Positions 1,142 to 63,764 of a stretch of 64,000 nt of DNA are shown here, in pieces (positions within the stretch are counted from its first letter, which is position 1; every line of letters starts with the position of its first letter). The DNA is taken from assembly GCA_002269645.1 (NCBI GenBank), contig NIVC01002536.1, forward strand, positions 1 to 64,000, given 5' to 3'. Origin of the DNA: Macrostomum lignano (taxonomy: Eukaryota). A program made the translations under genes and the position numbers. The notes under the pieces were generated by a model. It had not been told where the DNA came from. It saw nothing but the letters and a program-made list of their open reading frames with translations, and searched no databases.

Positions 1142-1177
1142 CTCTGGTATAATTGAGACATCTGAACAAATCTACAT

Positions 1178-2322
1178 GAGCATATGGCATCTGAGCATAT
1201 GGCATCTGAGCATATGGCATCTGAGCATATGGCATCTGAGCATATGGCATCTGAGCATATGGCATCTGAGCATATGGCATCTAAGCATATGCATCTGAGC
1301 ATATGGCATCTGAGCATATGGCATCTGAGCATATGGCATCTGAGTATATGGCATCTGAGCAAATAGGATCTGAGCATATGGCATCTAAGCATATGGCATC
1401 CGAGCATATGGCATCTGAGCATATGGCATCTGAGCATATGGCATCTGAGCAAATAGGATCTGAGCATATGGCATCTGAGCATATGGTATCTGAGCAAATA
1501 GGATCTGAGCATATGGCATCTGAGCATATGGCATCTGAGCATATGGCATCTGAGCATATGGCATCTGAGCATATGGCATCTGAGCATATGGCATCTGAGC
1601 AAATAGGATCTGAGCATATGGCATCTGAGCAAATAGGATCTGAGCATATGGTATCTGAGCATATGGCATCTGAGCATATGGCATCTGAGCATATGGCATC
1701 TGAGCATATGGCATCTGAGCATATGGCATCTGAGCAAATAGGATCTGAGCATATGGCATCTGAGCAAATAGGATCTGAGCATATGGCATCTGAGCATATG
1801 GCATCTGAGCAAATAGGATCTGAGCATATGGCATCTGAGCATATGGCATCTGAGCAAATAGGATCTGAGCATATGGCATCTGAGCATATGGTATCTGAGC
1901 AAATAGGATCTGAGCATATGGCATCTGAGCATATGGCATCTGAGCATATGGCATCTGAGCATATGGCATCTGAGCATATGGCATCTGAGCATATGGCATC
2001 TGAGCAAATAGGATCTGAGCATATGGCATCTGAGCAAATAGGATCTGAGCATATGGTATCTGAGCATATGGCATCTGAGCATATGGCATCTGAGCATATG
2101 GCATCTGAGCATATGGCATCTGAGCATATGGCATCTGAGCAAATAGGATCTGAGCATATGGCATCTGAGCAAATAGGATCTGAGCATATGGCATCTGAGC
2201 ATATGGCATCTGAGCAAATAGGATCTGAGCATATGGCATCTGAGCATATGGGATCTGAGCATATGGCATCTGAGCATATGGCATCTGAGCATATGGCATC
2301 TGAGCATAAGGCATCTCAGCAT
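1178..2322. repeat. 15-bp minisatellite, ~76 copies (GAGCATATGGCATCT with variant GAGCAAATAGGATCT), 405-bp higher-order period
   Basis: Unit visible; the GTATC marker variant recurs at 1651 and 2056 (27 units apart). Confidence 0.95.
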
Positions 2323-3114
2323 GATACCCGAGAAAACACTAGAGCCAAGCAAGCTTCGTGAGTCTTTAATAGTTGTTGAGTATAGGACAAGTTAAAATTA
2401 TTGACAGAAACGTTATTTTCCAGATTCTTAAAAAATTATTGCATGCAGAACTCAAATTACACGTAGAAGTTAATTAAATGTAGGACCTAGAAAGCATCAT
2501 ATCATTTAAAAAATTGATAAGGATAAGTTGCTCGTAACATGAACTATTGTACTTATTTCTGCAGTGTGTACTACGAACAGCAGAAACTTCAAATGAAAAG
2601 ACAAATGCGTTTTAGATGTTTAAAGAAAAAAACTTCATTGGTGAAGTGAATCAGCTGCCGATCACAATCAAACATCTTGTCAGCAGTGATGCACAACATG
2701 CTTGTTCAGCCAAATCGTTATCTCAAAGCAGCGAACTTGAACTCGACCTGAGGTGTCCAGACAGCCCTCTCCAATCTCAAACTCAACTTTTAGACTTCTA
2801 TAAATGGAATAAACAATTTTAGCGACTCAAACCTTTAGCTATTGTTCTCAAACTACTTGAGAAGCTCAGTGTGTGCTTTCTATAACACATTGCATGCAGG
2901 CGGGCAGGCCAACAAATTCAATTCAAATGCAGTAGTATTCAAGTTCAATGCCCTCAGAGCCTTGGCAATGAGTGGCAAATGGACAATAAAGCTAAAAGAT
3001 GGCTAAGACATACTGTAAGGGTCTAACCATCCAAGAAAAGACGGCAGCACGTGAAGGGGACACAGCGGAGCCCTCGGCATTCCAGCGACCGGAAAAACGT
3101 GCTGATTTCTACAC

Positions 3115-3122
3115 TATAAATA
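3115..3122 (+). promoter_or_regulatory. TATA box (TATAAATA) of the peptide gene
   Basis: Canonical TATAAATA ~100 nt upstream of the ATG at 3222. Confidence 0.5.
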
Positions 3123-3221
3123 CAGGGCCCTTGGATGCCCAGCAGACAACCAAGCAGCCAAGGCTAGATAACTCTACCAGCTTCTCAGCTTCATCAGGCT
3201 ACAGCTCTTAACTTCTTCATC

Positions 3222-3491
3222 ATGAGGTGGCAGTTTGTTCTCGGACTCCTGCTGTGCGCAGCTCTGGCCGCCGCCAGACCCAACAGCCAGGAGAACAGCC
3301 AAGAGGACGCGGAGGCGATGGCGGCGCTGGAGGCTCTGGCCGACATGGACGAGCCGGAGATGACGGACGAGAAGGCCGCCGAGCTGCAGAAGAAGTGGCT
3401 CCTTCGCCGCATCCGCATCAGGTGGAGGAGGGTGCTCCGCGTTGCCAGCAGGGTCTACAGGATCTACCGCTACCTGCCGATAGGCAAGTAG
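3222..3491 (+). CDS. Secreted prepro-peptide, 89 aa; putative cationic antimicrobial peptide precursor
   Basis: Signal peptide (aa 1-18), acidic pro-region (12 D/E in aa 24-54), KK site (57-58), 29-aa mature region with 10 Arg and no acidic residue, C-terminal G-K amidation signal; high GC3; TATA upstream, AATAAA downstream. Confidence 0.8.
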   Translation: MRWQFVLGLLLCAALAAARPNSQENSQEDAEAMAALEALADMDEPEMTDEKAAELQKKWLLRRIRIRWRRVLRVASRVYRIYRYLPIGK

Positions 3492-3646
3492 GTAGACTGC
3501 AGGCAGGTGCTCCGCTGCACCCACTGACCTCGGACACGGACCGGACACCGCCCATGATCGCCGGCCTTTCAACTGTGGGACTCAATCAGATTATTTCTAG
3601 TTGCTAACCATGTACTGTAACTGTATTGTTGACTGAAATATAATTT

Positions 3647-3652
3647 AATAAA
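3647..3652 (+). terminator. Polyadenylation signal AATAAA of the peptide gene
   Basis: First AATAAA downstream of the stop at 3491. Confidence 0.55.
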
Positions 3653-3669
3653 GTATTCCCTACACTGAG

Positions 3670-6600
3670 ACTACTAAGCAACGGCAGATGGCTTGATTTT
3701 GGAGGTGAGGTGGGTGTCAACCCTCCTCGCCTCTCATTGGCTGGCGCCCCGATCACTAGGTGATCGATACCCGTATCGATATCGGCGACTCGAACCCGCG
3801 ACCCTCCCCAGCCGCAGGCGCACCTACCGATATTAGATCCCAATAAATCAATCAGATCCCAAATCAATCAGATCCCAAATCAATCAGATCCCAAGCGCAC
3901 CCTCCCGAGCCGCAGGCGCCCATGCAGCAGGCGCCCATGCCGCAGGCACCCCGAGTGTACACTCTCCCGATATGTGTGTACACCGATATGTAGTCATCGA
4001 TACGGGCCTCTTCCCCTCTCTCACCTACATCTCAACTAGCGAAATCGAACCCAGGTCGCGCCCATACTAGGACACTACACGGTTGTGGGGTATAGGGAGC
4101 GAGAAGTTTCAACCCTAACGCTGACGCAGCCCTGTACAGTGAGAGTGTACGGGCAGAGAGGGGTGGGGCGGACAGAGAACCAGCCACTAGGTTGTTATAC
4201 TGTTGAAGCATAGGGAGCGAGAAGTTTTAACCCCGATGCTGACGCAGCCCTGTACACTGAGCGTGTACGGGCAGAGGGTGGGTGGAAAGAGATGTGAATA
4301 ACACAGCCTGCTGCAGGAGCCGGATAGAGAGGCGCATGCTAGGACAGAGAGGTAGTGTGAGTCACACACACCCCACAGAGAAAGCCATACAGAGGATAGA
4401 GAGCTCCCTCCCCAGTTGCAGGGGACAGAGAGGCAGGCAGGGTATGCAGGGGCATGCGAACCGTCAAGGGGCCACGCGAGGATAGAGTGGAGGAGCAGAG
4501 ATGTGTTTGGACAGAGAGCCAGCCACGTGTGCGTAGTGTGAGGGAACAGAAACATATGGAGCAGGAGGGAGATAGGAAGCAAACGCGCAGGGTAAGGGAG
4601 CCATGCAGCAGGGAGCAGTGTACAGTGAGACACGGGCAGGGGTGGAGCCGTGCGTGGACAGAGCTGAACGGCACGGTCAGCTGCAGGAATAGGATGATAG
4701 AGAGGCGCGGAGGGGGACAGAGAGCAGTGTGCAGGGTAGGCAGCCACGCAGGCTGGGGAACAGAGAGGCGCGTGTCAGCCAGTTACAGCCCGGGACAGAG
4801 AAGTATGAAGGGGGGCCTGGGACAGAGAAGTATGAAGGGGGGCCTGGGACAGAGTTGCGAGCAAGGCACAGAGAGAGGTAGGGTCCGGTAGCTATGTATA
4901 GGCAGGGACCCACGCGAGGGCAGGACAGGGCATGCAAGGCATGCAAATTACATGCAAGGGCAGTGAGGTGTGCGCGGAGGGAGACAGAGAGCAGTGTGTA
5001 GGGGTAGGTAACAGCAAACTTTAGTAGAGGCGCGTGCGGGGACGGAGAAACCAGTCTGAGCGTACAGAGACGTTACAGAGAGGTACACAAACAGAGACCA
5101 AAGCGGGCAGAGCACGTGTAGGGACAGAGACGTGAGGGAGAATAGACCAAAACACGCTATGTATTTTCAAAAGTTGGTTTTAGTGCAGCATATTTAATAG
5201 CGGGTAGTATAATAGTATGTACATAGTAGGTATAATGGTAGTAATAATAGTAAGTATATTAGCCCAAAAGGTAGGCTAAAACAGGCTAAACTGTGTGTAC
5301 GCATCCTCATCACCCCACAAGCCCCCTCTCCCGCCAGACTCACTCTTCCATACCCTCCTGTATTGCTGTATGAAGGAAAATATAGTGTAAAAATACAGAT
5401 CTTAACCGTCAGACCGCTGAAATCAGGGCACACTAGAGGGGTTTCGGGGTCTGCATGCTCTATGTAAGCTGTTTCAATTATGTTTTGAAAAAACTAGGGG
5501 CTTAAATACAACGTTTTATTCAAAAAGTAGGTTATTTTAATGAAATAGCTGACACAATCATTGTCGAGAGTAGAAATTTTTATAAGAAACCAGGCATTTT
5601 AGCAAAAATAAACCTTCAAACCACATAAAATTGAATAAAAAGCAGACATTTTCAATTATAAACCGCAAGTATTTTAATAGAAAAGTAAGCAAACAAGGCA
5701 CAAAACCAGCAAATTTTACCTTTTTATTTTAATGTTACTGATAAGGTAGAGAGTAGAAACTTGTGAGCTGTACGGAGTTAGAAAGTATTAACCATTATGT
5801 ATCGTATGAATTATTAGTTCAGTACCAGCCATTGGTCAAGCGAGCATTTATGAAGTTATTACGAGTGATGAAGGGATAGAGAGCTATATACAGGAAGACA
5901 GTATCCTTCTAAACCACCACGAACAGATTGCTAATAGAGATAAGCTTTGTCTGTGTGCAGTATGAGTAAGCGAAGGCGGGGCAAATACTTTTCCACATGC
6001 CGGACAGAACAGTATTGTGCTAGGATTTCTCTCGAAATCACGGTACGTTACTAGTTTTTATCACACCATCCAGATGCGTCAACTAGTCAGCAGTAGTCAT
6101 TTATATGTTATTAGAACTTACAAACCCAGGTCAAGTAAATATTACAAAGAGTATATTACGTACACACGCCAACTCCGAATACCAAGCCATACTAGTCTAC
6201 TTGCAGTGCTCCTGGAGGGAAGGGACGGCGGGGTGTACATCCGGCAGGGTGGGCGTCCAGCGAGTGTACATCTGACAGGATGGGTGTTCAGCAAGTGTAC
6301 ATCTGACAGGGTGGGCGTTCAGCAAGTGTACCTTCAGCGTCGAGTAGGTGTACACCCGTCAGTGGGGAACTCCACCCCTCCCACCAATGTCGTGTGCATG
6401 CGGTTAGTCAGTATAGTGGTGGGGTAGACGGTGCAGGAAGGAAACCCAGATGCTGACGCTGCCCTGTACAGCGAGCAACCAGCCCCCTGTAGCAGGAGGG
6501 GGACAGAGAGTGCGTGGAGGCAGTAGGAGATAGAGGACGCTACCCGGCATGTCGCAGCACGCGGCGCGGGACAGAGGCAGTGTGTAAGTCACCCCGCGGA

Positions 6601-9600
6601 GAGAGCTCCCCTGGCAGGAGGCGCGGGACAGAGAGGCGGTGAATCACACCCCACGGAGAGAGCCGTACAACGAGCTTCCCCACCCGAGTCCGGTAAATAT
6701 TACAGAGTATTACGTGCACACGCCAGCCCTGAATACCAAGCCATACTAGTCTACCTGCAGTGCTCCCAGAGGGAAGGGATGGTCAGGAGTTACACACCAA
6801 GAATGCATTCATACAAAGAGTACACAACTCGAGCCCAGACACCAAGTCACAGTCTACTTACAGTAGAGATGGTAGATTAATAGCAAGATTATATTACAAT
6901 TAGACCTCCCTAGCACATGAGGAGTGAAATTCAATAATAATTGAATTCAATAATAATACAACATTTAGACGTAGTAATTTAATTACAAAATACCACTAAC
7001 ACTGAGCCAACGAATTGTAGGTTACAAAGGAGTTGCCACTCATATGGAAAGCCAGTATAATGCAGGTGTGTATTATTAAAACATAGACAAAAACGATGCA
7101 GACGTATATACACACTATTGATTTTGTACATGTACATTTCGGCATATTACCACACATCGCGGGCACATATTATATATCGGGGGATAGGTTAAAATACACA
7201 CATCGTAGATGTAGAAGCAGACACAATGCAGGAAAATTATGATACGAGTGTACATATTAGTGCGTAAAAGTATCATATTATGACACCCTGTAGCACATAT
7301 TGACATAATGCAGGGGAAAATATTGACAGAAATAGTACACAATTGTAGAGGTAACAACCAGCCAACTAGTAAGGGCATCCAGCACTTGTTCAGGTTTTTT
7401 TTATTTCGAGACGAGTGTCATGCCCCCGCAAGAGATCTTATCAGAAATTTGTTGAACTCCACTGCAACTCTCCCCAGAACCTCCAAATGGGAGTTTTAAC
7501 ACTTGAGGGATCCCGCTCAATGTACAGTGCGGACGGAGAGGGGTAACAGAAAGCGCTGCATCAGACCGCGGAGCTGCATTCCTCCCCCGAGGTAGGCGCG
7601 TCAGCTCCCACTCCTCATTTAACCATCAAGTAAACTAAAGAAGTCAAGCAGAAAGCCTTACAATCACCCGCAACCAGCACAAGTAAGAGTACTTTCCACT
7701 AGAGAGCCATAGTGCAAGATTCGCGAGCCAAGTTGAAGAAGCACACCAAATTACACTAAAGACATATGTATTAAAAAGCATACCGGCACCTCTACAAAAA
7801 CACAGTATGTACCGATTAAAGTTGCTTTTGGTGCAGTGTATTTAATAAAAAGCAGGTACCTAACACAAAAGTAGGCATCAATGCAGTGCACGGGCTAAAC
7901 TGTATTTACAAACGCAGGGCAACGAACTACACACAATGTAGCGCATAGACATAATTGTACACATAAATGTACGCAATTTCCGGTATATAGGACCAAATGT
8001 ACGCAAATGTACACAATGTACACAAACACACACACACTCAGGCGTATTCACAGCAAGAGCTTCCTGCCGATGGCGCCATCGCCTGCGGCGATCGGTGCTG
8101 CAGGATGCGCTGCAGGATGCGCCTGAGTGTGTGTGTGTTTGTGTGCATTGTGTACATTTGCGTACATTTGGTCCTATATACCGGAGATTGCGTACATTTA
8201 TGTGTACAATTATGTCTATGCGCTACATTGTGTGTAGTTCGTTGCCCTGCGTTTGTAAATACAGTTTAGCCCGTGCACTGCATTGATGCCTACTTTTGTG
8301 TTAGGTACCTGCTTTTTATTAAATACACTGCACCAAAAGCAACTTTAATCGGTACATACTGTGTTTTTGTAGAGGTGCCGGTATGCTTTTTAATACATAT
8401 GTCTTTAGTGTAATTTGGTGTGCTTCTTCAACTTGGCTCGCGAATCTTGCACTATGGCTCTCTAGTGGAAAGTACTCTTACTTGTGCTGGTTGCGGGTGA
8501 TTGTAAGGCTTTCTGCTTGACTTCTTTAGTTTACTTGATGGTTAAATGAGGAGTGGGAGCTGACGCGCCTACCTCGGGGGAGGAATGCAGCTCCGCGGTC
8601 TGATGCAGCGCTTTCTGTTACCCCTCTCCGTCCGCACTGTACATTGAGCGGGATCCCCTCAAGTGTTAAAACTCCCATTTGGAGGCTCTGGGGAGAGTTG
8701 CAGTGGAGTTCAACAAATTTCTGATAAGATCTCTTGCGGGGGCATGACACTCGTCTCGAAATAAAAAAAACCTGAACAAGTGCTGGATGCCCTTACTAGT
8801 TGGCTGGTTGTTACCTCTACAATTGTGTACTATTTCTGTCAATATTTTCCCCTGCATTATGTCAATATGTGCTACAGGGTGTCATAATATGATACTTTTA
8901 CGCACTAATATGTACACTCGTATCATAATTTTCCTGCATTGTGTCTGCTTCTACATCTACGATGTGTGTATTTTAACCTATCCCCCGATATATAATATGT
9001 GCCCGCGATGTGTGGTAATATGCCGAAATGTACATGTACAAAATCAATAGTGTGTATATACGTCTGCATCGTTTTTGTCTATGTTTTAATAATACACACC
9101 TGCATTATACTGGCTTTCCATATGAGTGGCAACTCCTTTGTAACCTACAATTCGTTGGCTCAGTGTTAGTGGTATTTTGTAATTAAATTACTACGTCTAA
9201 ATGTTGTATTATTATTGAATTCAATTATTATTGAATTTCACTCCTCATGTGCTAGGGAGGTCTAATTGTAATATAATCTTGCTATTAATCTACCATCTCT
9301 ACTGTAAGTAGACTGTGACTTGGTGTCTGGGCTCGAGTTGTGTACTCTTTGTATGAATGCATTCTTGGTGTGTAACTCCTGACCATCCCTTCCCTCTGGG
9401 AGCACTGCAGGTAGACTAGTATGGCTTGGTATTCAGGGCTGGCGTGTGCACGTAATACTCTGTAATATTTACCGGACTCGGGTGGGGAAGCTCGTTGTAC
9501 GGCTCTCTCCGTGGGGTGTGATTCACCGCCTCTCTGTCCCGCGCCTCCTGCCAGGGAGCTCTCTCCGCGGGGTGACTTACACACTGCCTCTGTCCCGCGC

Positions 9601-12494
9601 CGCGTGCTGCGACATGCCGGGTAGCGTCCTCTATCTCCTACTGCCTCCACGCACTCTCTGTCCCCCTCCTGCTACAGGGGGCTGGTTGCTCGCTGTACAG
9701 GGCAGCGTCAGCATCTGGGTTTCCTTCCTGCACCGTCTACCCCACCACTATACTGACTAACCGCATGCACACGACATTGGTGGGAGGGGTGGAGTTCCCC
9801 ACTGACGGGTGTACACCTACTCGACGCTGAAGGTACACTTGCTGAACGCCCACCCTGTCAGATGTACACTTGCTGAACACCCATCCTGTCAGATGTACAC
9901 TCGCTGGACGCCCACCCTGCCGGATGTACACCCCGCCGTCCCTTCCCTCCAGGAGCACTGCAAGTAGACTAGTATGGCTTGGTATTCGGAGTTGGCGTGT
10001 GTACGTAATATACTCTTTGTAATATTTACTTGACCTGGGTTTGTAAGTTCTAATAACATATAAATGACTACTGCTGACTAGTTGACGCATCTGGATGGTG
10101 TGATAAAAACTAGTAACGTACCGTGATTTCGAGAGAAATCCTAGCACAATACTGTTCTGTCCGGCATGTGGAAAAGTATTTGCCCCGCCTTCGCTTACTC
10201 ATACTGCACACAGACAAAGCTTATCTCTATTAGCAATCTGTTCGTGGTGGTTTAGAAGGATACTGTCTTCCTGTATATAGCTCTCTATCCCTTCATCACT
10301 CGTAATAACTTCATAAATGCTCGCTTGACCAATGGCTGGTACTGAACTAATAATTCATACGATACATAATGGTTAATACTTTCTAACTCCGTACAGCTCA
10401 CAAGTTTCTACTCTCTACCTTATCAGTAACATTAAAATAAAAAGGTAAAATTTGCTGGTTTTGTGCCTTGTTTGCTTACTTTTCTATTAAAATACTTGCG
10501 GTTTATAATTGAAAATGTCTGCTTTTTATTCAATTTTATGTGGTTTGAAGGTTTATTTTTGCTAAAATGCCTGGTTTCTTATAAAAATTTCTACTCTCGA
10601 CAATGATTGTGTCAGCTATTTCATTAAAATAACCTACTTTTTGAATAAAACGTTGTATTTAAGCCCCTAGTTTTTTCAAAACATAATTGAAACAGCTTAC
10701 ATAGAGCATGCAGACCCCGAAACCCCTCTAGTGTGCCCTGATTTCAGCGGTCTGACGGTTAAGATCTGTATTTTTACACTATATTTTCCTTCATACAGCA
10801 ATACAGGAGGGTATGGAAGAGTGAGTCTGGCGGGAGAGGGGGCTTGTGGGGTGATGAGGATGCGTACACACAGTTTAGCCTGTTTTAGCCTACCTTTTGG
10901 GCTAATATACTTACTATTATTACTACCATTATACCTACTATGTACATACTATTATACTACCCGCTATTAAATATGCTGCACTAAAACCAACTTTTGAAAA
11001 TACATAGCGTGTTTTGGTCTATTCTCCCTCACGTCTCTGTCCCTACACGTGCTCTGCCCGCTTTGGTCTCTGTTTGTGTACCTCTCTGTAACGTCTCTGT
11101 ACGCTCAGACTGGTTTCTCCGTCCCCGCACGCGCCTCTACTAAAGTTTGCTGTTACCTACCCCTACACACTGCTCTCTGTCTCCCTCCGCGCACACCTCA
11201 CTGCCCTTGTATGTAATTTGCATGCCTTGCATGCCCTGTCCTGCCCTCGCGTGGGTCCCTGCCTATACATAGCTACCGGACCCTACCTCTCTCTGTGCCT
11301 TGCTCGCAACTCTGTCCCAGGCCCCCCTTCATACTTCTCTGTCCCAGGCCCCCCTTCATACTTCTCTGTCCCGGGCTGTAACTGGCTGACACGCGCCTCT
11401 CTGTTCCCCAGCCTGCGTGGCTGCCTACCCTGCACACTGCTCTCTGTCCCCCTCCGCGCCTCTCTATCATCCTATTCCTGCAGCTGACCGTGCCGTTCAG
11501 CTCTGTCCACGCACGGCTCCACCCCTGCCCGTGTCTCACTGTACACTGCTCCCTGCTGCATGGCTCCCTTACCCTGCGCGTTTGCTTCCTATCTCCCTCC
11601 TGCTCCATATGTTTCTGTTCCCTCACACTACGCACACGTGGCTGGCTCTCTGTCCAAACACATCTCTGCTCCTCCACTCTATCCTCGCGTGGCCCCTTGA
11701 CGGTTCGCATGCCCCTGCATACCCTGCCTGCCCCTCTGTCCCCTGCAACTGGGGAGGGAGCTCTCTATCCTCTGTATGGCTTTCTCTGTGGGGTGTGTGT
11801 GACTCACACTACCTCTCTGTCCTAGCATGCGCCTCTCTATCCGGCTCCTGCAGCAGGCTGTGTTATTCACATCTCTTTCCACCCACCCTCTGCCCGTACA
11901 CGCTCAGTGTACAGGGCTGCGTCAGCATCGGGGTTAAAACTTCTCGCTCCCTATGCTTCAACAGTATAACAACCTAGTGGCTGGTTCTCTGTCCGCCCCA
12001 CCCCTCTCTGCCCGTACACTCTCACTGTACAGGGCTGCGTCAGCGTTAGGGTTGAAACTTCTCGCTCCCTATACCCCACAACCGTGTAGTGTCCTAGTAT
12101 GGGCGCGACCTGGGTTCGATTTCGCTAGTTGAGATGTAGGTGAGAGAGGGGAAGAGGCCCGTATCGATGACTACATATCGGTGTACACACATATCGGGAG
12201 AGTGTACACTCGGGGTGCCTGCGGCATGGGCGCCTGCTGCATGGGCGCCTGCGGCTCGGGAGGGTGCGCTTGGGATCTGATTGATTTGGGATCTGATTGA
12301 TTTGGGATCTGATTGATTTATTGGGATCTAATATCGGTAGGTGCGCCTGCGGCTGGGGAGGGTCGCGGGTTCGAGTCGCCGATATCGATACGGGTATCGA
12401 TCACCTAGTGATCGGGGCGCCAGCCAATGAGAGGCGAGGAGGGTTGACACCCACCTCACCTCCAAAATCAAGCCATCTGCCGTTGCTTAGTAGT
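3670..12494. mobile_element. 8.8-kb foldback (palindromic) element with 6-bp TSD; Maverick/Polinton-like non-autonomous derivative
   Basis: Arms 3670-8044 and 8120-12494 are reverse complements (coordinate sum 16164/16165; mirrored ORFs such as 4187..4747 and 11417..11977). Ends ACTACT...AGTAGT; ACTGAG at 3664-3669 and 12495-12500. The structure is directly seen; the family assignment is inference. Confidence 0.85.
3845..3893. repeat. 16-bp tandem x3 (AAATCAATCAGATCCC) in the left arm; mirrored at ~12271-12319
   Basis: Directly visible in both arms. Confidence 0.85.
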
Positions 12495-13118
12495 ACTGAG
12501 ATTAATTTTGTACTGGATTTAATTAGTTCGGGCAAAAACTTATAATCTGTTTGGAGTTTCGTGTTCAACATTATTTAATTGATTAGCATTTAGTCTGCAG
12601 ACCCGCACATTGATTAATAAATTCAAGGGTTTAATTGCAATTTACTCAGGTTTTTAAATACTCATTTACACAGGCAAATCATTTAGCAGCAGTAAGCAAC
12701 AAAAAGTGTATATTTAATTTTTTATGACACCAGAGCAACATGAGCAGACCTACTCGACTTACTCAAAAATCCATGGCTCATTTTAGGCACTGGAAGCGGC
12801 CAGTCATAAAATGACGTAGTAAAAATAATGAGCTAATGTAAAAACTACCTAATAACAATTTGTAACAGTAGGTGAAGTCTGGCTAGCTGGGATTTATAAA
12901 ACATGATCGAAAAATTCAAATTTACAATGCATTTGGATTAGATTAATATATGCCAATTGACTTAATTAGTAACTGGTAGATGAAAAATGACTAAGTGTCG
13001 GGTCATGATTAAAACTTATATTATACAAAACAGATGGAAATGCACATTGCATTGATACCGATTTCTTCCTAACACGGATTAATAACGTTCACCAGTTAGT
13101 TATTGGATTGGAAGTAAT

Positions 13119-15732
13119 CCCGACCGAAAATATTTGTCCTTTCAAAAACAGTAAGTGTGCCAGTTGTGCCACAAATATGCCCTTTGACAGAGTTATAAAT
13201 GTCTTTGTATGTCATATTTGGCACACTTGATACAATTGTACCAATTGTGCCGTAGCTATGCCATTTGGCACAGTTTGTAAATGTCGATGTATGTCCTATT
13301 TGGCACACTTGACACAAATAGTATTTTTACTGCTAATTGGCCAATGAAACCAATTGGCACACTTAACACACTTGCTACAATTGTGCCAGTTGTGCCACAG
13401 CCATAACATTTAGCACAGTTATAAATGTCTTTGTACGTCCCATTTGGCACACCTGGCACAAATAACATTTTTATAGCTAATTCCCCTTGGAAACCATTTG
13501 GCACACTTGGCGCACTTACTACAAGTGTACCAGTTGTGCCACAGCTATACTATTTGACACAGTTATATATGTCTTGGACTGTCCTTCTTGGCACACTTGG
13601 CACGAATATCCTTTTTATAGCTAATTGGTTATTAAAACAGACTGGCACACTTGGCCCACTTGCTACAATTGTACCAGTTGTGCCACAGCTATGACATAAT
13701 TGGCACAGTTATATGTCTTTGTCCTTCTTGGCACACTTGGCTCAAATAACCTTTTTTATTGCTAATTACTAACAAAACTATTTGGCACACACCTGGTGCA
13801 ACTTGCACTGAGGCTGCGACGTCAGTAGCTTCGATTTCGGCAGATGACCGGCAGGTTTTCACTCCCAACTTGCGGCATGATCTGCTCAGACGCTCGAAAA
13901 TGGCGCAACCGCGTTTGATTGACGCCATTACAAAAGAACTAAAGCAGCAGATCACGCAGCATTTCGCCGTCCATCTAGATCAGCTCGTGGACCCAGCCGT
14001 CACAGTTGATAACATGCTGGTCGACGACAATGGAAAGAAATTATACCACGGTAAGAAATTAATAGTCCTTCATTTATGATCGCGCAAATATCCTATTGTT
14101 ACTCTCAAACGCTCTTCAATCCTTAAAAAAACACCTCTGCAGCCAATCGGTTTCGCCTTTACGTCCAACGTCGCTCGGACCAGGGTCACGGCCAGTAAGG
14201 ATATATCAAGAACCAACGACTCCGGCCAACCTCAATGCACTTCTCCGCGAGATGGTGCGGGGGTGCTTCAGCGACGACGAGATTTTGGTAACGTCGTTGA
14301 GCGGTCGCGCTACTGAGCCTGGTCGGCCACGCCTGCTACCTGGCTGGAATCGACATCCCAACCAATGAATGCGATTGAAAAGGTCACGTCCGATGCTCCA
14401 TCACCGTCAGTCGGCGTGAAAAGCAATCCGGACGTTTGCCTGTAAAGAAACTTCGTCAAGGTGCGGCTAATGCACTCGCGAGGACTGAGCGCCGGATGTC
14501 TGCTGTTGCATCTAGCAAAACTAAACTTGTTTGGCAGATGCGGGACCCGTCTAGCTTGGCCTGTCTCCCTCATGTTTCTGGTTTTGTTTTCCCCTGGAAA
14601 TATGCTCTTTCCCACATAAAGTAACGAACTACATTACTATAGTTAGTTCCAGACTCGTAAATTACAATAGCACCAGGAATCAGACTTGTTGTCTAACTAG
14701 AAAAGTATAGGGGAACAGAGGTATTGGAGTTGGTTTCACTAATTGCTTGTTTTTTTATCTAGTTGTTTGTTTGTGCTTTTTAAATTAATACATTAGATGT
14801 ATACATGTTGCTACATTAAAATCCTGTGCCACGTGTAGTCGACTCAGTAGTTAATTTGTTACATTGCATGTTTTAGTTTCAAATGTATTAGAAGTGTAAA
14901 CTCTTTGGCTGGCACCACAATTTTCATGCACCGCGCTTTTTAATTACGTTGTTTTTTGTTTCCTGTCCAATGTCCGCTGTCTGTTATGTTTCTTTCCGTT
15001 AACTTCTAGTATGCATTTTTTAATTCCGCAGCCTCCCCTTTTTCCTGTTTTATACATGTTTTTTGTCCTATTTGCTACTTCCCATTAAATATATACGTAC
15101 CTGGTATTTATGCAACATCCCTTTTTCCAACTGTTTCAATCTGTTTATGTTCGCGCTCAACATTTTAAAGTTAAATTTACATTAACAACTCTTTTCAATT
15201 TGTCTTCCCTCATTTAAACATGAGAAGGACTTCTCGCAAAATCTTAGCTACTTCATACATACGCTTCATAACTCGTAGTTGACTAACGGGTCAACTATAA
15301 CAGCATCAGATAGCATATTATGCGCTTAGTTCAACTGCTTTAAACTGCAAATTCACTCGTCTGGAGAATTTACGCCAAATGGCACAGTACGCGCTAGTTT
15401 AACTGCTTCAAGCTGCACATTTACTCGTATTGTGCCAAATGGTACATTTATGGCACAGTTGTGCACAATTATAAGCACTCAAAAATAGCTGAGACAACTG
15501 GCACAGTTGTGGCACAGTTGTGGCACAGCAGTGCACAATTAAAAATTTGATTCTTAATTGTGTCACATGTGCCAATTGGCACAGCTTGGCACAGTTAAAT
15601 TTGTGCCAAGCTGTGCCACCAATTGTCGATTCTCACAAATTTCGTGTCGTTTCGACAGTTATTTTGGGATTCCCCCCAATTCATTTTTATGTGCTATTTG
15701 ACGCATTTAAAGAACAATTATTTCCGGTCGGG
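13119..15732. mobile_element. CMC/EnSpm(CACTA)-like non-autonomous DNA transposon, 2.6 kb
   Basis: Imperfect ~26-bp TIRs (CCCGACCGAAAATATTTGTCCTTT vs reverse complement of right end CCCGACCGGAAATAATTGTTCTTT); AT on both sides (13117-8, 15733-4); dense subterminal GGCAC/GTGCC repeats at both ends (144-bp period on the left). Confidence 0.7.
13900..14624 (+). pseudogene. Decayed BEN-domain gene inside the TIR element
   Basis: 14231-14335 encodes LNALLREMVRGCFSDDEILVTSLSGRATEPGRPRL, matching the BEN pattern L..lF+.eEL...s.sG.....p.L. GT-AG intron 14051-14142; pieces lie in different frames. Confidence 0.5.
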
Positions 15733-16226: not shown

Positions 16227-18220
16227 CTAGCCTCGCAATCCTAATTCGGAGACTTTCCGTTGAGCAAACTGCATAACAACCATTGAAGTGCCGTTAGCTA
16301 AGAAGCTGCGAATGGTGCCCGGCAGCAGGCCGCGATAAAGTCCGAAGAAGCCGCCTCGCTGCTTAATAGTGAGCCTGAGCCTGGCAAGGGTTGGCATGGG
16401 CTGGCCATACTGGCCCTGCACCTGGCTCTTCATGTACTCCAGCGGCCACACGAGCCACCAGGCGGCTGTCGCAGCCATTCCCGATGCCAAGAACGGTCCA
16501 GCAACTGAACGGGCAAAAAAGTCCGGAAAATGTCTCCGACCGGAGTCAATTAAAACAAAGTAAGTAGTCATTAGGCCGAGGGTTCGAACCCAGGTGACGC
16601 TGAAACCGCTGTAGAGTCCGCCTAGGGTCCAAGTTTGGCCAGTTTGGCGACGGATTTTCGCCACTTCAAGCGGGCACTCGATTATGGCGCGAGCGGTGGA
16701 GGCCAGAATGCCGCCTAAGATGACCCGCCTGCGGCGATGGGGAGAGCGCTGATGCTGAAACGCTGATGGGGAGAGCACTGTATCAGCCATGGAGTGCTGT
16801 GGGCTTATAGTCCTCATCTGATACAGTGCTGTGGGGCTTATAGTCCTCATCTGATACAGTGCTGTGGGGCTTATAGTCCTCATCTGATACAGTGCTGTGG
16901 GGCTTATAGTCCTCATCTGATACAGTGCTGTGGGGCTTATAGTCCTCATCTGATACAGTGCTGTGGGGCTTATAGTCCTCATCTGATACAGTGCTGCGGG
17001 GCTTATAGTCCTCATCTGCTACAGTGCTGTGGGGCTTATAGTCCTCATCTGATACAGTGCTGTGGGCTTATAGTCCTCATCTGATACAGTGCTGTGGGCT
17101 TATAGTCCTCATCTGATACAGTGCTGTGGGCTTATAGTCCTCATCTGATACAGTGCTGTGGGCTTATAGTCCTCATCTGATACAGTGCTGTGGGGCTTAT
17201 AGTCCTCATCTGATACAGTGCTGTGGGGCTTATAGTCCTCATCTGATACAGTGCTGTGGGCTTATAGTCCTCATCTGATACAGTGCTGTGGGCTTATAGT
17301 CCTCATCTGATACAGTGCTGTGGGCTTATAGTCCTCATCGGATACAGTGCTGTGGGGCTTATAGTCCTCATTTGATACAGTGCTGTGGGGCTTATAGTCC
17401 TCATTTGATACAGTGCTGTGGGGCTTATAGTCCTCATCTGATACAGTGCTGTGGGGCTTATAGTCCTCATTTGATACAGTGCTGTGGGGCTTATAGTCCT
17501 CATCTGATACAGTGCTGTGAGCTTATAGTCCTCATCTGATACAGTGCTGTGGGGCTTATAGTCCTCATTTGATACAGTGCTGTGGGGCTTATAGTCCTCA
17601 TTTGATACAGTGCTGTGGGCTTATAGTCCTCATCTGATACAGTGCTGTGGGCTTATAGTCCTCATCTGATACAGTGCTGTGGGTCCTCAGATGGGGTGGT
17701 GGTGGCTGAGTCTCGCTGCTGGGGTTAAGGTGGCAAATCAATATTGAAGATTGAAACGCTACAATCGTTGGGATTGATAGCACTCACCCTTGCACTCCGC
17801 CGGTGAAGGGGATGGGCTCAATAAACAGACTAGAGCTCAAGCCGGTGTAGACACTTTCGAACACGGCAAATTGGGTTGAACGAAAAATTCCAGAGCCCCA
17901 CAGAGGCGGAATGCAACCCCTAGGATGTATAAAAGGCAGGGAATTAATTTATATTGAACTTCGTGTCTTCTTGGTGAATCAAATGTAGACAGCGGCATTT
18001 AGACTTACCGATATAATCCAATAACTCCTTCAGCACGCCAAGTTTTGTTAAAAGCTTTCAGCATTCCGCCAGTGTCAAAGCCTTGCTGGGCCTGCATTTT
18101 GGTCTTCATAGTGTCAAATGGGTGGCCAACAACCACATTTGTGACACCATAGAGGATGCCAACGCCTAGACCTATGCCCCCTTCCTTAAGCCAATGAGCT
18201 CGTTTCTCATTGTGCGTCAT
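16227..18220 (-). CDS. Mitochondrial carrier (SLC25 family), ~281 aa, 3 exons
   Basis: Exons 18220-18009, 17919-17788, 16728-16227; GT-AG, phases 2/2 consistent; three carrier signatures (PFDTMKTKMQ, PLEVAKIRRQ, PLEYMKSQVQ). Subfamily not assigned. Confidence 0.92.
16793..17682. repeat. 33/32-bp intronic minisatellite, ~27 copies
   Basis: ATAGTCCTCATCTGATACAGTGCTGTGG(G)GCTT fills SLC25 intron 2. Confidence 0.95.
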
Positions 18221-21248: not shown

Positions 21249-24200
21249 ATGCAAAGAAGCACAAGTGTTCCCCTGAATTCATTGAAACTAAAAGAATCAG
21301 TATTGAACTCCATCAATATAGATGATAGTGAGAAAAGAGAAAATGTTGAAAATTGCAGCAAAGAATTAATAGAGGAATCCAATGAACCCTATAGTAGTAA
21401 TGGGTTATATATTTCTGATGATAAACTAGATAGAGCTTCAAGACCAAAAGAATATGCTCCAGCATCTAATCAAGATATAGGTAAGTTTTATAATTATAGT
21501 TTTGTTTTTAAATATTTTCCAAAAATTAAAATCTACATGCAAAAAGGTAATATATTATACTAAAAACTTGTTGTTTTTGGTAGATAGGTGGGTATGCATT
21601 AAATCATGAGTCTAGTTCTTATATATTTTGAACATTTGTCATAGCCTATAAAATAAGAGGCCCTGAAGTATTAAAAAAGATATTTTGCAATATAAAAAGT
21701 TAGAAGTTGTTTGAATTTGACTGTTTTTAGATTATTTTTAATAATAAAAAATAATATTAATAATTGTAAAAAGAATGTAATATGCATTTAAATTTTTTTC
21801 TAAGTATATACCCTTGCTTGAGATTCACCCATATAAGTTTAAAATTGCATTGCTGATAATTCTAGTGAATTTGACACCTTTATTAGAATAAATTTATTCT
21901 ATAGATAGGAAATAGATTAGTGCAGGTCTCGGCTAAAGAACATATGGCAAATTCAAACAGTTATGATAAGCAAATTAGAGTAACAAATTTCAATATGACG
22001 AAGCATCATTGCCTATTAAAGAGTGCATTGTTACTCTCACCGATTACCTATTTTCATCAGGCAGGAACACCCGCAGCTGCTCTGTGCATGCGATCAGCGC
22101 TGCAGCAGCTCAACAGCAGCAGCCTCTGCCATTGCAAGCTTTGCCAGCCAAAATTCGGGCCAGCAGCAGCCGTTTAGCCAGTCTTGGCCGATTATTCAAG
22201 CCATGGAAATGGCGCAAACGACGGGACAAAGATCCACCCGGTGAGGTCCCCTGCGGTGAGTGAGTTCATCGTGCCTGATTAGATCGAATTTCACACTCAT
22301 CTGGAATCAGTCTGATCTTTCCCAATTCCCATTGGCAACTGTAACCCGATAATGACATCCAATGGCCACGCCCTCAAATCATCTTTATTTCGGTTCCACC
22401 CACATCGTCTGTTTTCCCATCCCAGTTTGGCAGATATAAATTTTCTATTTGACTTAATTGTGCTTGGAAGTAAAGTATTTCTTCTACTTTAAGTAGCAGA
22501 GAAAGCTGATTGTTGCGCGATTTGTTTTAAATAAAGTTTACAACAAGCAGTTTCTGCCTGATGCAATTGGTAATTCTGTATACGACACACAATCCAACTC
22601 CAGTCGGGGACATATGCTGTTATTTTGAACTGAGGCCAGCTATGAAAATGCGCACAATATCCCACATCCCATTCCTTGGCTAACATGCAATCCTGACCCG
22701 GATTGTCTATCTCTCCACCCCCTGTAAGTAGTATGTTAGAGTTTTTTTCTATTATTTAATTGCGCATAATTAAAGCATTGGTTCTACTTGAAGTAGCAGA
22801 CAGCGCTGATTGTTGCGCGATTTAAAAAAAATTCTATACAGTAGGTAAGTATAACAACCAACTTAGATGGCGAGTTATTGACTAGTTTCGATACAGATAT
22901 ATTTACTCTCGCCTTATACTCGATTGTGTGAGTGTAACTGATAGGAGATGTTGGCATTTTACACTTAATTTTGAATTTCTTGACTCGTTACCATTCCTAG
23001 ATTCGATGGATAATTAGTGGGTGGATAATAGCCGTCTCACCAGTTCAATTCTCTACTTCACTTTCTGTACTCTGATTCTGTATGTAGATACCCACGCACA
23101 CGCAACACAGATACATACATTTCCGTTGTCTCAGCTGTCCTGTCCCTGTTCGCGCACACGTGGGTGGGGTTAGCTACCGGGACAGATCGATATAGCCAGA
23201 GAAGAGACCCGTACTACTGTAGGACAGAGCTACGTTTATGCTACATTATGATCGGCGCCTCGGCACACGTGTTATCTGTGCAATGCTGCCCTGCTTCTTA
23301 CCCAATGCCCGATCTGAACACAACAGCCTTTTTCATAGGCAAAATCTGTACTGCCGCATGCATAGCAAAATGGTGCAAGAGTACATTGTAAAATACCGAA
23401 CACCCACCCACTCACCCACCTTTACCTAGATGTCTTCCCCTGCTCTCTCTTTCTCTCTCTCTCTCTGCTCTTGAGCAAATCCTTAGTTTTATATACCTTT
23501 GGATTATTTTCTCAACCCCAGCCCTAAACCCCCCTGTCCGTTTTATATTGATCTTGAATCGCTGGAGTTCCCTCCTTAACGAATCCACCCACAATCCCCA
23601 TATAAGTATTATTCACCCAAATTCTGTAGCTCTGCCTCCTCCGCATTTCGCTTTCATTTCGCCTCAAGCATTATAATGTGATTTTTATTTAGTAAAGCAC
23701 CTCCAAAGGAAAGATTCCCAAAGCAGAAATGCTCAAATAGGTATCAATCCAGCTCTTAGTGGCTAATGCTGAAATTCTTCAGAAATCTTTTCCCAAGCCT
23801 GGCCAAGTCCAAAAGTTTCGAACAGCTGCTGAATCTTGATGTCGGTATGATAATGCATAATTCGCTAGTATTGTTTATTTATTCGTTATAAACACCTTAT
23901 GCCTACTGGGTTTGGCTGCTTAGTAGTATTCAAGTGTTTATATACATGTATGTGATTTGTTATAGAAAAGCAAGGTTTGCAACAAAGTTTTACTGATTTG
24001 CTTTGGCACCTTTGTCAGGTCTATAGCTAATTTGCTTTGTTCCAAACCCATATGTCTGACACCTAATCCCATAGTTCTTGTGACTTCATGACCCAATCCC
24101 ATAGTTCTTGTGACTTCATGACCCAATCCCATGATTCTTGTGACTTCATGACCCAATCCCATGATTCTTGTGACTTCATGACCCAATCCCATGATTCTTG

Positions 24201-29305: not shown

Positions 29306-30670
29306 TCCGCAATGGCTATTCAAATACGGAGAGAAGTTAACACGCTACTAACTTTACTACTGCACAAGTAGCGTATGTAGCATATTGCGCTTGTTGAGTA
29401 TTACATTTTTATCTATTAAAATTTTCCCATTTGTTCCGTTTAATAAAATTCCACGGATTTCCAAGAAACCAACTTTTTTGTTCTCCCAATTGGAGCTTTT
29501 CTTTGTCTCCTAGGTAACCGCGATTACGATAACAAATTGATAAAGTATTGCATTATGGTTTTGGCTTGTGCGTGTACCTTTTACTAAACTTTTGCTTGGA
29601 TTTTTTCAACTCTGTTGCAGAAGCAGAATTTATTTGGGACTCGATTAAAAGAATAAGAAGTACAATTTTGTGTTGGCTGTGCTTTTTGTTGTGCAATGAT
29701 AAATTTCCATGTTGGCTGCGTGCTTTTCTGTAAGTAGAGTTGGATAACCATTTATGAAACAATTAATTTTTGCAGAGCCTTTCGAACTCTTAACAGTTGC
29801 TGTGGTTTATTTTTGTTCATACGCATACATTTGCTCTAGTCATTGCTACCCATGTACTAATATAGTTTTTTTAGATTTACACATATATATCATAAAATGT
29901 ATACTAAAATCATGCTAACTACTAAGTAAGTAGCAAGATTTGTGCTTTAATTTTTTTTCAATTTCTGCGCCCATGCACGACTGTCTGGATCTGGATTCAA
30001 AACCGAAAGCTTGTTTAAAAATTTTACTCTCTAGTCCTGGCGCCTAAACAATTGCTTTTTTACAACTGACAAAGCTGTTCTCTCGAGTAATTACAGACTG
30101 ACTCATTAACGTAAAATATGCTATTTTATCGTGTGCTTTCTTAAATAAAGAAACTATATCGGCACTTGTATTAAACTGGTCGTTTACATTATATTATTAT
30201 TATTAATTCAATTAATTATTAAAGAATTATTCAACCCCTCTAATCCAACTTCTGAGGTTGACCTATATTTCAAGTGTTGTATTGTTCTTTCCTACCAAAA
30301 CGACTCGTACAATTTAAATAAATTTAACCATTACTAAAATTGACCACTTTTTGGATAGAAATTGACTTTGAAATGACACATACTGATGTGTCTAATTTAC
30401 TACATTTATCAGTATAACAAATTTGCTCATAATTTATTGCCACTCGCTATGCAAAATAAAGCAAGGGAAACAAGCAAAGGTTAATTAGAAGAGCCAACAG
30501 ATCAAATTGGTTTGCATGTATTGCAGTGCATCTGATGGCACATCTAGGAACACTGGTAGCTCATAAGCGCAATAATTTCAATTTACGAGATAAATAATTG
30601 AAGCTCAAATTTGGCTTTCTCTAGTTAGCACAAAGTTGGTGATGTGATTGAGAGTTGGGGTTTACTCAAG

Positions 30671-40497: not shown

Positions 40498-40820
40498 GCG
40501 ATGTACTTTTACTTTTATTAATCACTGCCTTTATCGAGGTTTTGTTATCTCAAGCATTTTCTTACCTGCTGTCATTGAAGTTTGTAGTATTGTCACCTGT
40601 AAATTTTTAAGCCGAAATATAAAGCAAAACTGAACGCGAGATCATTGCGTGTCTGCTGTGTTGTCAGTGATAAAAAGTTTTCGATTGTAAATGAGCTGAA
40701 TGAAACAATTTTAGTAATAAAAATACGTAAGTGTACGAGTATTTGTAATTTTGACAGAGATTACGTAAACTCATGATATTGGTACATTATTTTCATTTGA
40801 CTTTCGAGACTTTGTTGCGT

Positions 40821-41620: not shown

Positions 41621-41844
41621 GATTAACCAATTAAACCAATTAAATGGTTTTCGAATGATCTAGAACTACAAGCTAATTAATTAGGTGTTAGCGGATAAAC
41701 TTATTTATTACTATCCGACAATGCTGGCCACATTTCTGCTAAAATTCAATAACTTTTTCGCTTGTTTTAGCGGAATGCCGCCATTTTTTTTTCACAAATT
41801 TACCACTAAATTTAAAGTTCCGCTAATTTTGACTCGGTTTTTAA

Positions 41845-43723: not shown

Positions 43724-43759
<36 letters not shown>

Positions 43760-43909
43760 AATGCTTGAGAGCAGCAGAGGCTACAGTCTGGTCTTCCCCG
43801 GGGTTAGGGCCACAGACACCAGCTGCTGCTGCTGCTGCTGCTGCTAATGCTTGAGAGCAGCAGAGGCTACAGTCCATGGTCTTCCCCGGGGTTAGTGCCA
43901 CAGACACCA

Positions 43910-43945
<36 letters not shown>

Positions 43946-49448: not shown

Positions 49449-49549
49449 TCTGAGCGATGGAGCATGCAGTTGAGCGATAAGGAGAATCAACTGGGTTAGC
49501 CATCAGACAGTTTTTGAGCCAGATTTATAGAGATAAAGTGCCTTGTGCG

Positions 49550-52740: not shown

Positions 52741-52900
52741 GCATAATCAGCTCTATTCGGGTGCAGAGAAGTTTAATGACTTACTATGTAAATAGAATTA
52801 GATGTGTTAGTTTTAACCTGTCGAACATATAGTGATACTATAAAATAGCAACCACACAATATAGTTCTAAAAGCAAAAGCTAAAATAGTTAACAAAATAA

Positions 52901-63764
<10,864 letters not shown>

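What the first reader, a model, noticed from the sequence alone, without database searches (positions are those of the whole stretch)
3664..12500. 8.8-kb fully palindromic mobile element with a 6-bp TSD: a candidate snap-back Maverick/Polinton-type genome
Seen: arms 3670-8044 and 8120-12494 (4,375 bp each) are reverse complements. I found only four substitutions, all transitions (4431/11733, 4954/11210, 7479/8686, 8019/8145), and two homopolymer indels (~6610, ~7507); this was not an exhaustive alignment. The ends are ACTACT...AGTAGT, flanked by the direct repeat ACTGAG (3664-3669, 12495-12500). I recognise no integrase, pPolB, ATPase or capsid ORF. Known: a 6-bp TSD, long TIRs and short terminal reiterations are Maverick/Polinton hallmarks, and terminal reiteration serves slide-back initiation in protein-primed replication (adenovirus CATCAT). 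Protein-primed and parvoviral replicons make snap-back defective genomes. Inference: this is one long end of such an element copied back on itself and integrated in trans by a helper integrase. That would be a defective-interfering-like parasite of a self-synthesising transposon. Caveat: described Polinton ends are usually AG-starting (e.g. AGTAGT); here they start ACT.
Basis: partly seen in the sequence, partly recalled or inferred. Interest (0 to 1): 0.92.

Follow-up and report, generated by a model that had tools for sequence, protein, structure and literature searches.

The report
Palindromic foldback-type transposon insertion
An 8.8-kb stretch of animal DNA that reads almost the same on both strands is a real, gene-less "foldback" transposon insertion with a 6-base target duplication; nothing found here ties it to Maverick/Polinton virus-like elements.

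Summary
Arms 3670-8044 and 8120-12494 (4,375 nt each) are reverse complements. The arms flank a 75-nt centre, and ACTGAG is directly repeated at both junctions. A 7-nt reading of that repeat is possible.

The element has no coding capacity. The longest ORF is 186 aa, and a six-frame Pfam scan found nothing. No other copy lies in the window, and its terminal sequences have no exact match in the viral or metagenome collections.

Each arm is modular:
- a unique terminal domain with small palindromes;
- short tandem arrays;
- about 10 single-orientation copies of GGACAGAGA, which occur nowhere else in the window;
- alternating GC-rich and AT-rich blocks.

The centre is a decayed palindrome, and the arm differences crowd toward it. 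That argues for a real, aged palindrome and against an assembly fold-back.

Best reading: a non-autonomous long-TIR (foldback-type) class II element, moved in trans by an enzyme that makes 6-bp staggered cuts. The superfamily is unresolved.

The Maverick snap-back idea rests only on the TSD length and a doubled terminal trinucleotide. Against it:
- the end motif has the opposite polarity to published Maverick ends;
- the arms are three or more times longer than any reported Maverick TIR;
- 4.4 kb of supposed "end" carries no gene remnant.

Interest is modest.

The parts
3664..3669 (.). Left copy of the target-site duplication (ACTGAG)
   Evidence: Read directly. It is identical to 12495-12500. 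Chance of 6/6 at fixed positions is 2.4e-4.
3670..8044 (+). Left arm (long terminal inverted repeat, 4,375 nt)
   Evidence: Reverse complement of 8120-12494 with 5 transitions and 2 one-base indels. No ORF above 186 aa and no Pfam hit in six frames.
3670..3834 (+). Unique terminal domain with two small palindromes (about 3750-3766 and 3763-3780); candidate recognition site for the mobilising enzyme (inferred)
   Evidence: Sequence; stem ATCGATAC/GTATCGAT and the hairpin at 3750-3766.
3835..3951 (+). Subterminal tandem arrays (16-mer x3.5 at 3835-3894; 15-mer x2.7 at 3912-3951)
   Evidence: Tandem Repeats Finder and repeat families; mirrored at 12213-12319.
4092..5130 (+). GC-rich domain with 72-nt repeats (4092-4163, 4210-4281), a 27-mer array (4788-4854) and 11 single-orientation copies of GACAGAG
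   Evidence: The 9-mer GGACAGAGA occurs 10 times in this arm, always on the + strand, 9 times mirrored in the other arm, and nowhere else in the window.
5150..6150 (+). AT-rich domain (GC 0.27-0.45), non-coding
   Evidence: Composition in 100-nt bins; dense stop codons in all frames.
6114..6782 (+). Second GC-rich domain: about 115-nt direct repeats (6114-6228, 6672-6782) bracketing a 31-mer x3.2 array (6233-6331) and 3 more GACAGAG copies
   Evidence: Families D1, D6, D12 and D13.
6800..8044 (+). Inner, mostly AT-rich domain ending in a CA-rich run; holds 3 of the 5 arm substitutions
8045..8119 (.). Central 75-nt middle domain: a decayed palindrome centre that includes a 12-mer x2.2 repeat
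   Evidence: Not part of the perfect arms. It keeps residual two-fold symmetry: half-against-half score 7 against shuffles at -3.7 +/- 3.2, reached by 1 of 500. It folds weakly alone (z -2.0).
8120..12494 (-). Right arm (inverted copy of the left arm)
12495..12500 (.). Right copy of the target-site duplication (ACTGAG)
   Evidence: Read directly.

Best explanation
This is a genuine insertion of a non-coding class II transposon of the foldback type. The element (3670-12494, 8,825 bp) consists of two 4,375-bp inverted arms around a 75-bp middle domain. It sits in an intergenic region of a metazoan genome, with a 6-bp target (ACTGAG) duplicated on each side.

Shown: the palindrome, the exact ends, the flanking duplication, the absence of genes, the modular arms with strand-specific motif arrays, and divergence that rises toward the centre.

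Inferred:
(1) The element encodes nothing, so it was moved in trans. The enzyme would come from a related autonomous element elsewhere in the genome. It would bind the identical ends (the terminal unique domain and/or the subterminal repeats) and join them to target cuts staggered by 6 bp.
(2) Both ends are the same sequence, so only one kind of end has to be recognised.
(3) The palindromic build arose in one of two ways. Either one half of a progenitor was copied back on itself (fold-back or hairpin copying), or the terminal inverted repeats elongated stepwise. The centre then decayed.
(4) The arms remain 99.84% alike because the element is young, because the arms convert each other, or both.

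The superfamily of the mobilising enzyme is not resolved. A 6-bp duplication fits a Polinton-type integrase and hAT6. It also fits IS3EU/GingerRoot, whose end motif is not met.
For: Palindrome and ends.
Target duplication: 6/6, P=2.4e-4.
Flanks: unrelated to each other and unique in the window, so this is an insertion and not a local inverted duplication.
Coding capacity: none.
Foldback-style domain structure: a unique terminal domain, tandem arrays, internal repeats and a short non-coding middle domain. This matches the published description of foldback elements (PMC4079207).
Element-specific motif: GGACAGAGA occurs 10 times in the left arm (9 mirrored in the right), in one orientation, and nowhere else in the window.
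Decayed centre: residual symmetry reached by 1 of 500 shuffles; 3 of 5 substitutions lie within 570 nt of the centre, P=0.018.
Against: Only one copy is available, so family status, the range of TSD lengths and a partner element are all unseen. No copy or fragment lies elsewhere in the window. The viral and metagenome collections hold no exact match to 20-24-nt probes from the terminal ~90 nt. Described foldback families make 7-10-bp duplications, not 6. The arms are less dominated by long tandem arrays than classic foldback arms. The role of the motif arrays as binding sites is a guess.
Confidence: 0.7

Rival explanations
1. The element is one long end of a Maverick/Polinton-type element that was copied back on itself during protein-primed replication. 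A helper integrase then inserted it, making it a defective parasite of a self-synthesising element.
For: The 6-bp duplication is the characteristic Polinton/Maverick length. The ends are a trinucleotide repeated twice, the same style as the doubled-trinucleotide ends of vertebrate Mavericks. The element is a near-total palindrome with identical ends, as a snap-back copy would be.
Against: The end motif has the opposite polarity to the published one: ACT doubled at the 5' end here, AGT doubled at the 5' end in Mavericks. A doubled trinucleotide has a 1-in-64 chance. The arms are 4,375 bp, against reported TIRs of 46-1,447 bp (mean 402) or 100-1,500 bp. A 4.4-kb end of a coding parent should therefore carry about 3 kb of gene sequence, but no frame hits any Pfam family at E<=1. 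The window holds no polymerase, integrase, ATPase or capsid gene. The terminal 22-mer has no match in viral contigs. A 6-bp TSD is shared with hAT6 and IS3EU/GingerRoot. No non-coding palindromic Polinton derivative turned up in the literature searched.
Confidence: 0.15
2. An ordinary short-TIR element inserted here, and the palindrome formed afterwards in place. Template switching or conversion between its ends lengthened the TIRs inward until they met.
For: TIR elongation is the published route to foldback structure. The process keeps the original ends and TSD, so it fits. The graded divergence toward the centre would fit an inward-moving process.
Against: Nothing distinguishes formation in place from formation in an ancestor copy before transposition. 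Replacing a whole 4.4-kb half exactly would need a single long event or many steps, and no intermediate is seen. This is a variant of the best explanation and not a true alternative.
Confidence: 0.08
3. An assembly or library artefact: a fold-back chimeric long read, or an amplification chimera, built into the contig.
For: Near-perfect palindromes are a known artefact of long-read and amplified libraries (own knowledge). The two indels are run-length differences and all substitutions are transitions, both of which are also common error types.
Against: A fold-back chimera does not return to the original flank, and it does not create an exact 6-bp direct repeat at the precise ends of the inverted repeat. 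The runs involved are only 3-4 bases long. The centre is a decayed palindrome with graded divergence, not an abrupt turn-around.
Confidence: 0.05

Closest known systems
Foldback-type transposons (Drosophila FB, Tetris, sea-urchin TU and similar), a structural class
   Same: Very long inverted arms make up nearly the whole element. Arms are modular, with a unique outer domain, tandem-repeat domains and an inner domain. The middle domain is short and non-coding. There are no ORFs, and the element is flanked by a target duplication.
   Different: The duplication is 6 bp (possibly 7), against 8-10 bp for FB/Tetris, which are assigned to the Mutator superfamily. The arms carry only short arrays (2.5-3.5 units), not long tandem arrays. 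The arms are longer (4.4 kb) and the middle domain shorter (75 bp) than in Tetris, whose TIRs reach 1,735 bp.
Galileo (foldback-like member of the P superfamily)
   Same: Long TIRs, many non-autonomous copies, and insertion into AT-rich sequence. The 7-nt reading of the junction repeat would match its TSD length.
   Different: The 7-nt reading needs an imperfect TIR. Galileo's palindromic target consensus (GTANTAC type) does not match ACTGAG(A). No P-type transposase is available here for comparison.
Maverick/Polinton elements
   Same: 6-bp target duplication, inverted ends, and a trinucleotide repeated twice at each end.
   Different: No genes, whereas Polintons by definition encode a protein-primed polymerase and an integrase. 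Size is 8.8 kb against 13-25 kb. Arms are 4.4 kb against at most 1.5 kb. The end motif has the opposite polarity.
hAT6 and IS3EU/GingerRoot cut-and-paste elements
   Same: Both make 6-bp target duplications.
   Different: IS3EU/GingerRoot ends are TA..TA, occasionally TG..CA; here they are AC..GT. The usual hAT end pattern (own knowledge) is not evident. Neither group is known for kilobase-long TIRs.
Inverted-duplication derivatives of transposons that yield hairpin RNA (for example maize Mu killer; own knowledge)
   Same: A long inverted duplication of transposon sequence that would form a long hairpin if transcribed.
   Different: No expression or small-RNA data are available here. Mu killer is a rearranged partial copy, not a transposed unit with its own target duplication.

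Membership tests
Maverick/Polinton | Encodes a protein-primed family B polymerase and a retrovirus-like integrase (by definition, PMC5499653) | tested here: not met
   Six-frame Pfam scan of 3670-8121: 0 families at E<=1. Longest ORF is 186 aa. A non-autonomous derivative could lack both genes, so this rules out 'is a Polinton' but not 'derives from one'.
Maverick/Polinton | 6-bp target-site duplication | tested here: met
   ACTGAG on both sides. A 7-nt reading is possible.
Maverick/Polinton | End motif: AGT doubled (or AG tripled) at the 5' end and its complement at the 3' end (PMC8097293, vertebrate elements) | tested here: not met
   The ends are ACT doubled at the 5' end and AGT doubled at the 3' end, the opposite polarity. 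Ends of invertebrate Polintons could not be checked.
Maverick/Polinton | TIRs of about 50-1,500 bp within a 13-25-kb element | tested here: not met
   Arms of 4,375 bp in an 8,825-bp element, against the ranges.
Maverick/Polinton | For a non-autonomous member: same TSD length and the first 11 terminal nt shared with an autonomous member (Repbase rule, PMC4455052) | not testable with these tools
   Neither the source genome nor a repeat library is available. No other copy lies in the window. No exact matches in the public collections.
Foldback-type elements (structural class) | Long inverted arms forming most of the element, with a short non-coding middle domain | tested here: met
   Arms make up 99% of the element; middle domain is 75 nt.
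Foldback-type elements (structural class) | Modular arms containing tandem repeats | tested here: met
   16-, 15-, 27- and 31-nt arrays, 72- and 115-nt repeats and motif arrays. The arrays are short compared with classic FB arms.
Foldback-type elements (structural class) | A dispersed family of copies, each with its own target duplication | not testable with these tools
   Only a 64-kb window is available, with one copy in it.
FB/Tetris (Mutator superfamily) | 8-10-bp target duplication | tested here: not met
   6 nt, or 7 at most.
Galileo (P superfamily) | 7-bp (rarely 8-bp) target duplication with a palindromic consensus | tested here: inconclusive
   A 7-nt direct repeat, ACTGAGA, exists only if the TIR is one base short on one side. 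The sequence does not match the published consensus.
IS3EU/GingerRoot | 6-bp duplication and TA..TA (occasionally TG..CA) termini | tested here: not met
   TSD length is met; the termini are AC..GT.
hAT6 | 6-bp duplication; hAT-type transposase in autonomous members | tested here: inconclusive
   TSD length is met. No transposase or family consensus is available to compare ends.
Dada (own knowledge: 6-7-bp duplication, insertion into small-RNA genes) | Target lies within a tRNA or snRNA gene | tested here: not met
   No tRNA and no Rfam family at gathering score at or near the insertion site.

The most novel reading that the evidence does not exclude
The element is a gene-less hairpin-genome satellite of a Maverick/Polinton-type element. 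One terminal segment was copied back on itself. It depends on a helper's polymerase and integrase, and it uses an end motif of a polarity not yet described for that group. Non-coding palindromic derivatives of such elements did not turn up in the literature searched.
Probability: 0.12. Interest if true: 0.8.

Novelty: new member of a known kind. Interest (0 to 1): 0.3.

Why it matters
If the best explanation is right, this is one more foldback-type non-autonomous transposon. It is of local use for annotating this genome. It is also a likely hotspot for hairpin formation, rearrangement and, if transcribed, hairpin RNA. Two features give it some extra value. First, the 6-bp duplication is not the length seen in the foldback families read about here, which supports the view that the foldback build arises independently in several superfamilies. 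Second, the graded decay toward the centre is a clean natural example of how a long palindrome ages in an animal genome. Only if a Maverick/Polinton partner with the same ends were found would it become a notable case of a defective parasite of a virus-like element.

Tried and rejected
(1) Other copies or fragments in the window: blastn of one arm and of both flanks, the terminal 15-mer with 3 mismatches and a window-wide inverted-repeat search. Nothing lies outside the element.

(2) Relatives in public collections: exact scans with 20-24-nt probes from the first ~90 nt of the arm in viral contigs and metagenome contigs. No matches. The bacterial/archaeal genome, phage, plasmid and E. coli collections were not searched, because the window is metazoan.

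(3) Exact-protein look-ups of one arm ORF and two host ORFs, to find the source assembly. None is on record.

(4) Host identification. An LRR ORF gave no homologue at 1e-10. A flippase exon gave best hits of only about 59% identity, to ticks, flatworms and a shrimp. The RPL10 exon is closest to vertebrate ribosome structures. The host is a metazoan of unknown species. The third protein search was not spent, because arm ORFs are spurious and the host is evidently not in the database.

(5) An apparent tRNA-like stretch near 3780-3800 and 4040-4080, noticed by eye. It is not supported by ARAGORN or Rfam at E<=1, and was dropped.

(6) The Rfam mir-3149 hit at the centre (45 bits against a gathering score of 100, on both strands). 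It reflects the palindrome with its CA/TG run and was rejected as a gene.

(7) CpG deamination as the source of the five transitions. None is in a CpG context.

(8) Two abutting inverted copies of an ordinary element, acting as a composite. Rejected because the inner ends of the arms do not carry the terminal sequence.

(9) Alternative boundary parses (3-bp, 4-bp and 7-bp duplications). All need an imperfect TIR. Only the 7-nt reading is kept as a caveat.
Full report
**Observation**

The repeat search over 3000-13500 returns three abutting inverted-repeat blocks that together span 3670-8047 and 8117-12494 at 99-100% complementarity. A global alignment of the two halves sets the arms at 3670-8044 and 8120-12494, each 4,375 nt. 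The arms differ by five substitutions, all transitions. There are also two one-base run-length differences, C4 vs C3 near 6608 and G3 vs G4 near 7507.

The ends read ACTACTAAGCAACGG... and its reverse complement. ACTGAG lies immediately outside both ends. The inverted repeat cannot be extended outward. The chance of a 6/6 direct repeat at these fixed positions is 2.4e-4.

One caveat applies. The base after each ACTGAG is A, so a 7-nt duplication is possible if the element's first A is really target sequence. That reading needs a TIR one base short on one side. A single copy cannot decide between the two.

**Setting**

The window is metazoan nuclear DNA. Host genes found in it:
- an RPL10 gene, whose first exon is closest to vertebrate ribosome structures;
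- exons of a P4-type flippase ATPase, a mitochondrial carrier, an RPEL-repeat protein, Nop25 and fibrinogen-C domains;
- the tail of a non-LTR retrotransposon.

The window is also very dense in minisatellites. The best database relatives of the flippase exon are only about 59% identical. Three window ORFs are not on record. The species is therefore unknown and evidently absent from the collections.

The element sits between a small ORF with a signal-peptide-like start (3222-3491, +) and the 3' end of the mitochondrial carrier gene (-). It lies about 17 nt past an AATAAA. The two flanks are unrelated to each other and unique in the window.

**Anatomy**

The element carries no genes. The longest ORF in an arm is 186 aa, in a repeat-rich GC-rich stretch. 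All six frames have 56-78 stops per ~1,480 codons. Six-frame translations hit no Pfam family at E<=1. No RNA family reaches threshold. A sub-threshold miRNA-family hit at the exact centre on both strands simply reflects the palindrome.

Each arm is modular:
- a unique terminal domain of about 165 nt with two small palindromes;
- 16-nt and 15-nt tandem arrays;
- a 1-kb GC-rich domain with 72-nt repeats, a 27-nt array and 11 copies of GACAGAG, all in one orientation;
- a 1-kb AT-rich domain;
- a second GC-rich domain, where about 115-nt direct repeats bracket a 31-nt array and three more motif copies;
- an inner, mostly AT-rich domain.

The 9-mer GGACAGAGA occurs 10 times in the left arm on one strand, 9 times mirrored in the right arm, and nowhere else in the 64 kb.

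**The centre**

The 75-nt middle domain is not a random spacer. Its two halves keep residual complementarity, with an alignment score of 7 against -3.7 +/- 3.2 for shuffles; only 1 of 500 shuffles reaches it. It contains a small 12-nt tandem duplication.

The arm substitutions lie 3613, 3090, 565, 66 and 25 nt from the inner end. Three of the five therefore fall in the innermost 13% of the arm (P=0.018). None is at a CpG.

Divergence thus rises steadily toward the symmetry centre. This is what is expected of a real palindrome whose centre is the fragile, error-prone part (own knowledge of palindrome centre instability). It is not what an abrupt fold-back chimera in an assembly would look like. 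Together with the exact target duplication and the return to an unrelated flank, this makes an artefact unlikely. I put it at about 5%.

**What it is**

The structure matches the published description of foldback-type transposons: long TIRs built of an outer unique domain, tandem-repeat domains and an inner domain, around a short non-coding middle domain, with no ORFs and a flanking target duplication (PMC4079207). [quoted passage not shown]

The best explanation is therefore a non-autonomous foldback-type class II element. It was inserted by an enzyme supplied in trans that makes 6-bp staggered target cuts. Which enzyme is open. FB/Tetris (Mutator) make 8-10-bp duplications and Galileo (P) makes 7 bp. 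A 6-bp duplication is reported for three groups:
- Polinton/Maverick;
- hAT6;
- IS3EU/GingerRoot, which has TA..TA ends, not met here.

The palindrome itself most likely arose either by copying one half back on itself (a fold-back or hairpin intermediate) or by inward TIR elongation. This may have happened in an ancestor copy or at this site. That step is inference.

**The Maverick/Polinton reading**

The evidence in its favour is the TSD length and a trinucleotide repeated twice at each end. Five points count against it:
- Published vertebrate Maverick ends are AGT doubled at the 5' end and ACT doubled at the 3' end. Here the polarity is reversed, and a snap-back copy would keep its parent's end polarity.
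- Reported TIRs are 46-1,447 bp (mean 402) or 100-1,500 bp. A 4.4-kb copy of one end of a coding parent should therefore hold about 3 kb of gene sequence, yet nothing is detectable.
- Polintons by definition encode a protein-primed polymerase and an integrase. Neither gene occurs anywhere in the window.
- The terminal 22-mer has no exact match in the viral contig collection, and two probes (the terminal 20-mer and a 24-mer about 65 nt in) have none in the metagenome collection.
- No non-coding palindromic Polinton derivative appeared in the literature searched.

The reading is not excluded, since no partner element could be looked for. I give it about 0.12-0.15.

**Verdict**

- Observation: confirmed, with two small corrections (a fifth transition and a possible 7-nt duplication).
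- Interpretation: partly supported. A trans-mobilised, gene-less palindromic mobile element is supported; a Maverick snap-back is not.
- Novelty: a new member of a known structural kind. Its unusual points are the 6-bp duplication, the near-total palindromy and the graded central decay.
- Interest: 0.3.
- Decisive evidence: the descriptive evidence that would settle the matter is a whole-genome census of copies, their duplications and any coding partner with the same ends; spanning long reads; and an allele without the insertion.
- Out of scope: a functional mobility test lies outside what this report may propose.

Noticed in passing
window 3168-3652: An 89-aa ORF from an ATG near 3222 to the stop at 3489-3491 (+) has a signal-peptide-like start followed by acidic and then basic stretches. 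AATAAA lies at 3647-3652, so the element sits about 17 nt past a possible poly(A) signal. No Pfam hit.
   Followed up: partly
window 3664-3670 and 12495-12501: The junction direct repeat can be read as 7 nt (ACTGAGA) instead of 6 if the first base of the element is counted as target.
   Followed up: yes
window 8020-8144: Sub-threshold Rfam hit to the mir-3149 family on both strands (45 bits against a gathering score of 100). It reflects the palindrome centre with its CA/TG run, not a credible miRNA gene.
   Followed up: yes
window 1177-2322, 16793-17683, 24061-26018, 27955-29201, 39432-41621, 47463-47928, 48672-51144, 51999-52742, 53128-56968, 60206-60666: Very high density of minisatellites (periods 15-70 nt, up to 76 copies), several of them inside introns of the flippase and RPL10 genes. 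They produce long spurious ORFs in several frames.
   Followed up: partly
window 30648-31436 (+): Tail of a non-LTR retrotransposon (weak RNase H and zf-RVT matches), followed by a degenerate 30-nt array at 31449-31805. It is the only other transposon-derived coding sequence seen in the window.
   Followed up: partly
window 48190-49490 (-), 53619-61125 (-), 16227-17015 (-), 26950-28251 (+), 39004-39369 (+), 43057-45332 (-): Host gene pieces: RPL10, a P4-type flippase ATPase (ATP9-like), a mitochondrial carrier, an RPEL-repeat protein, Nop25 and fibrinogen-C domain exons. The best database identity for the flippase exon is only about 59%, so the host lineage is poorly represented in the collections.
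   Followed up: partly
window 31942-32961 (-): A 339-aa ORF with C-terminal leucine-rich repeats (Pfam) found no homologue at E<=1e-10 in the large protein database.
   Followed up: no
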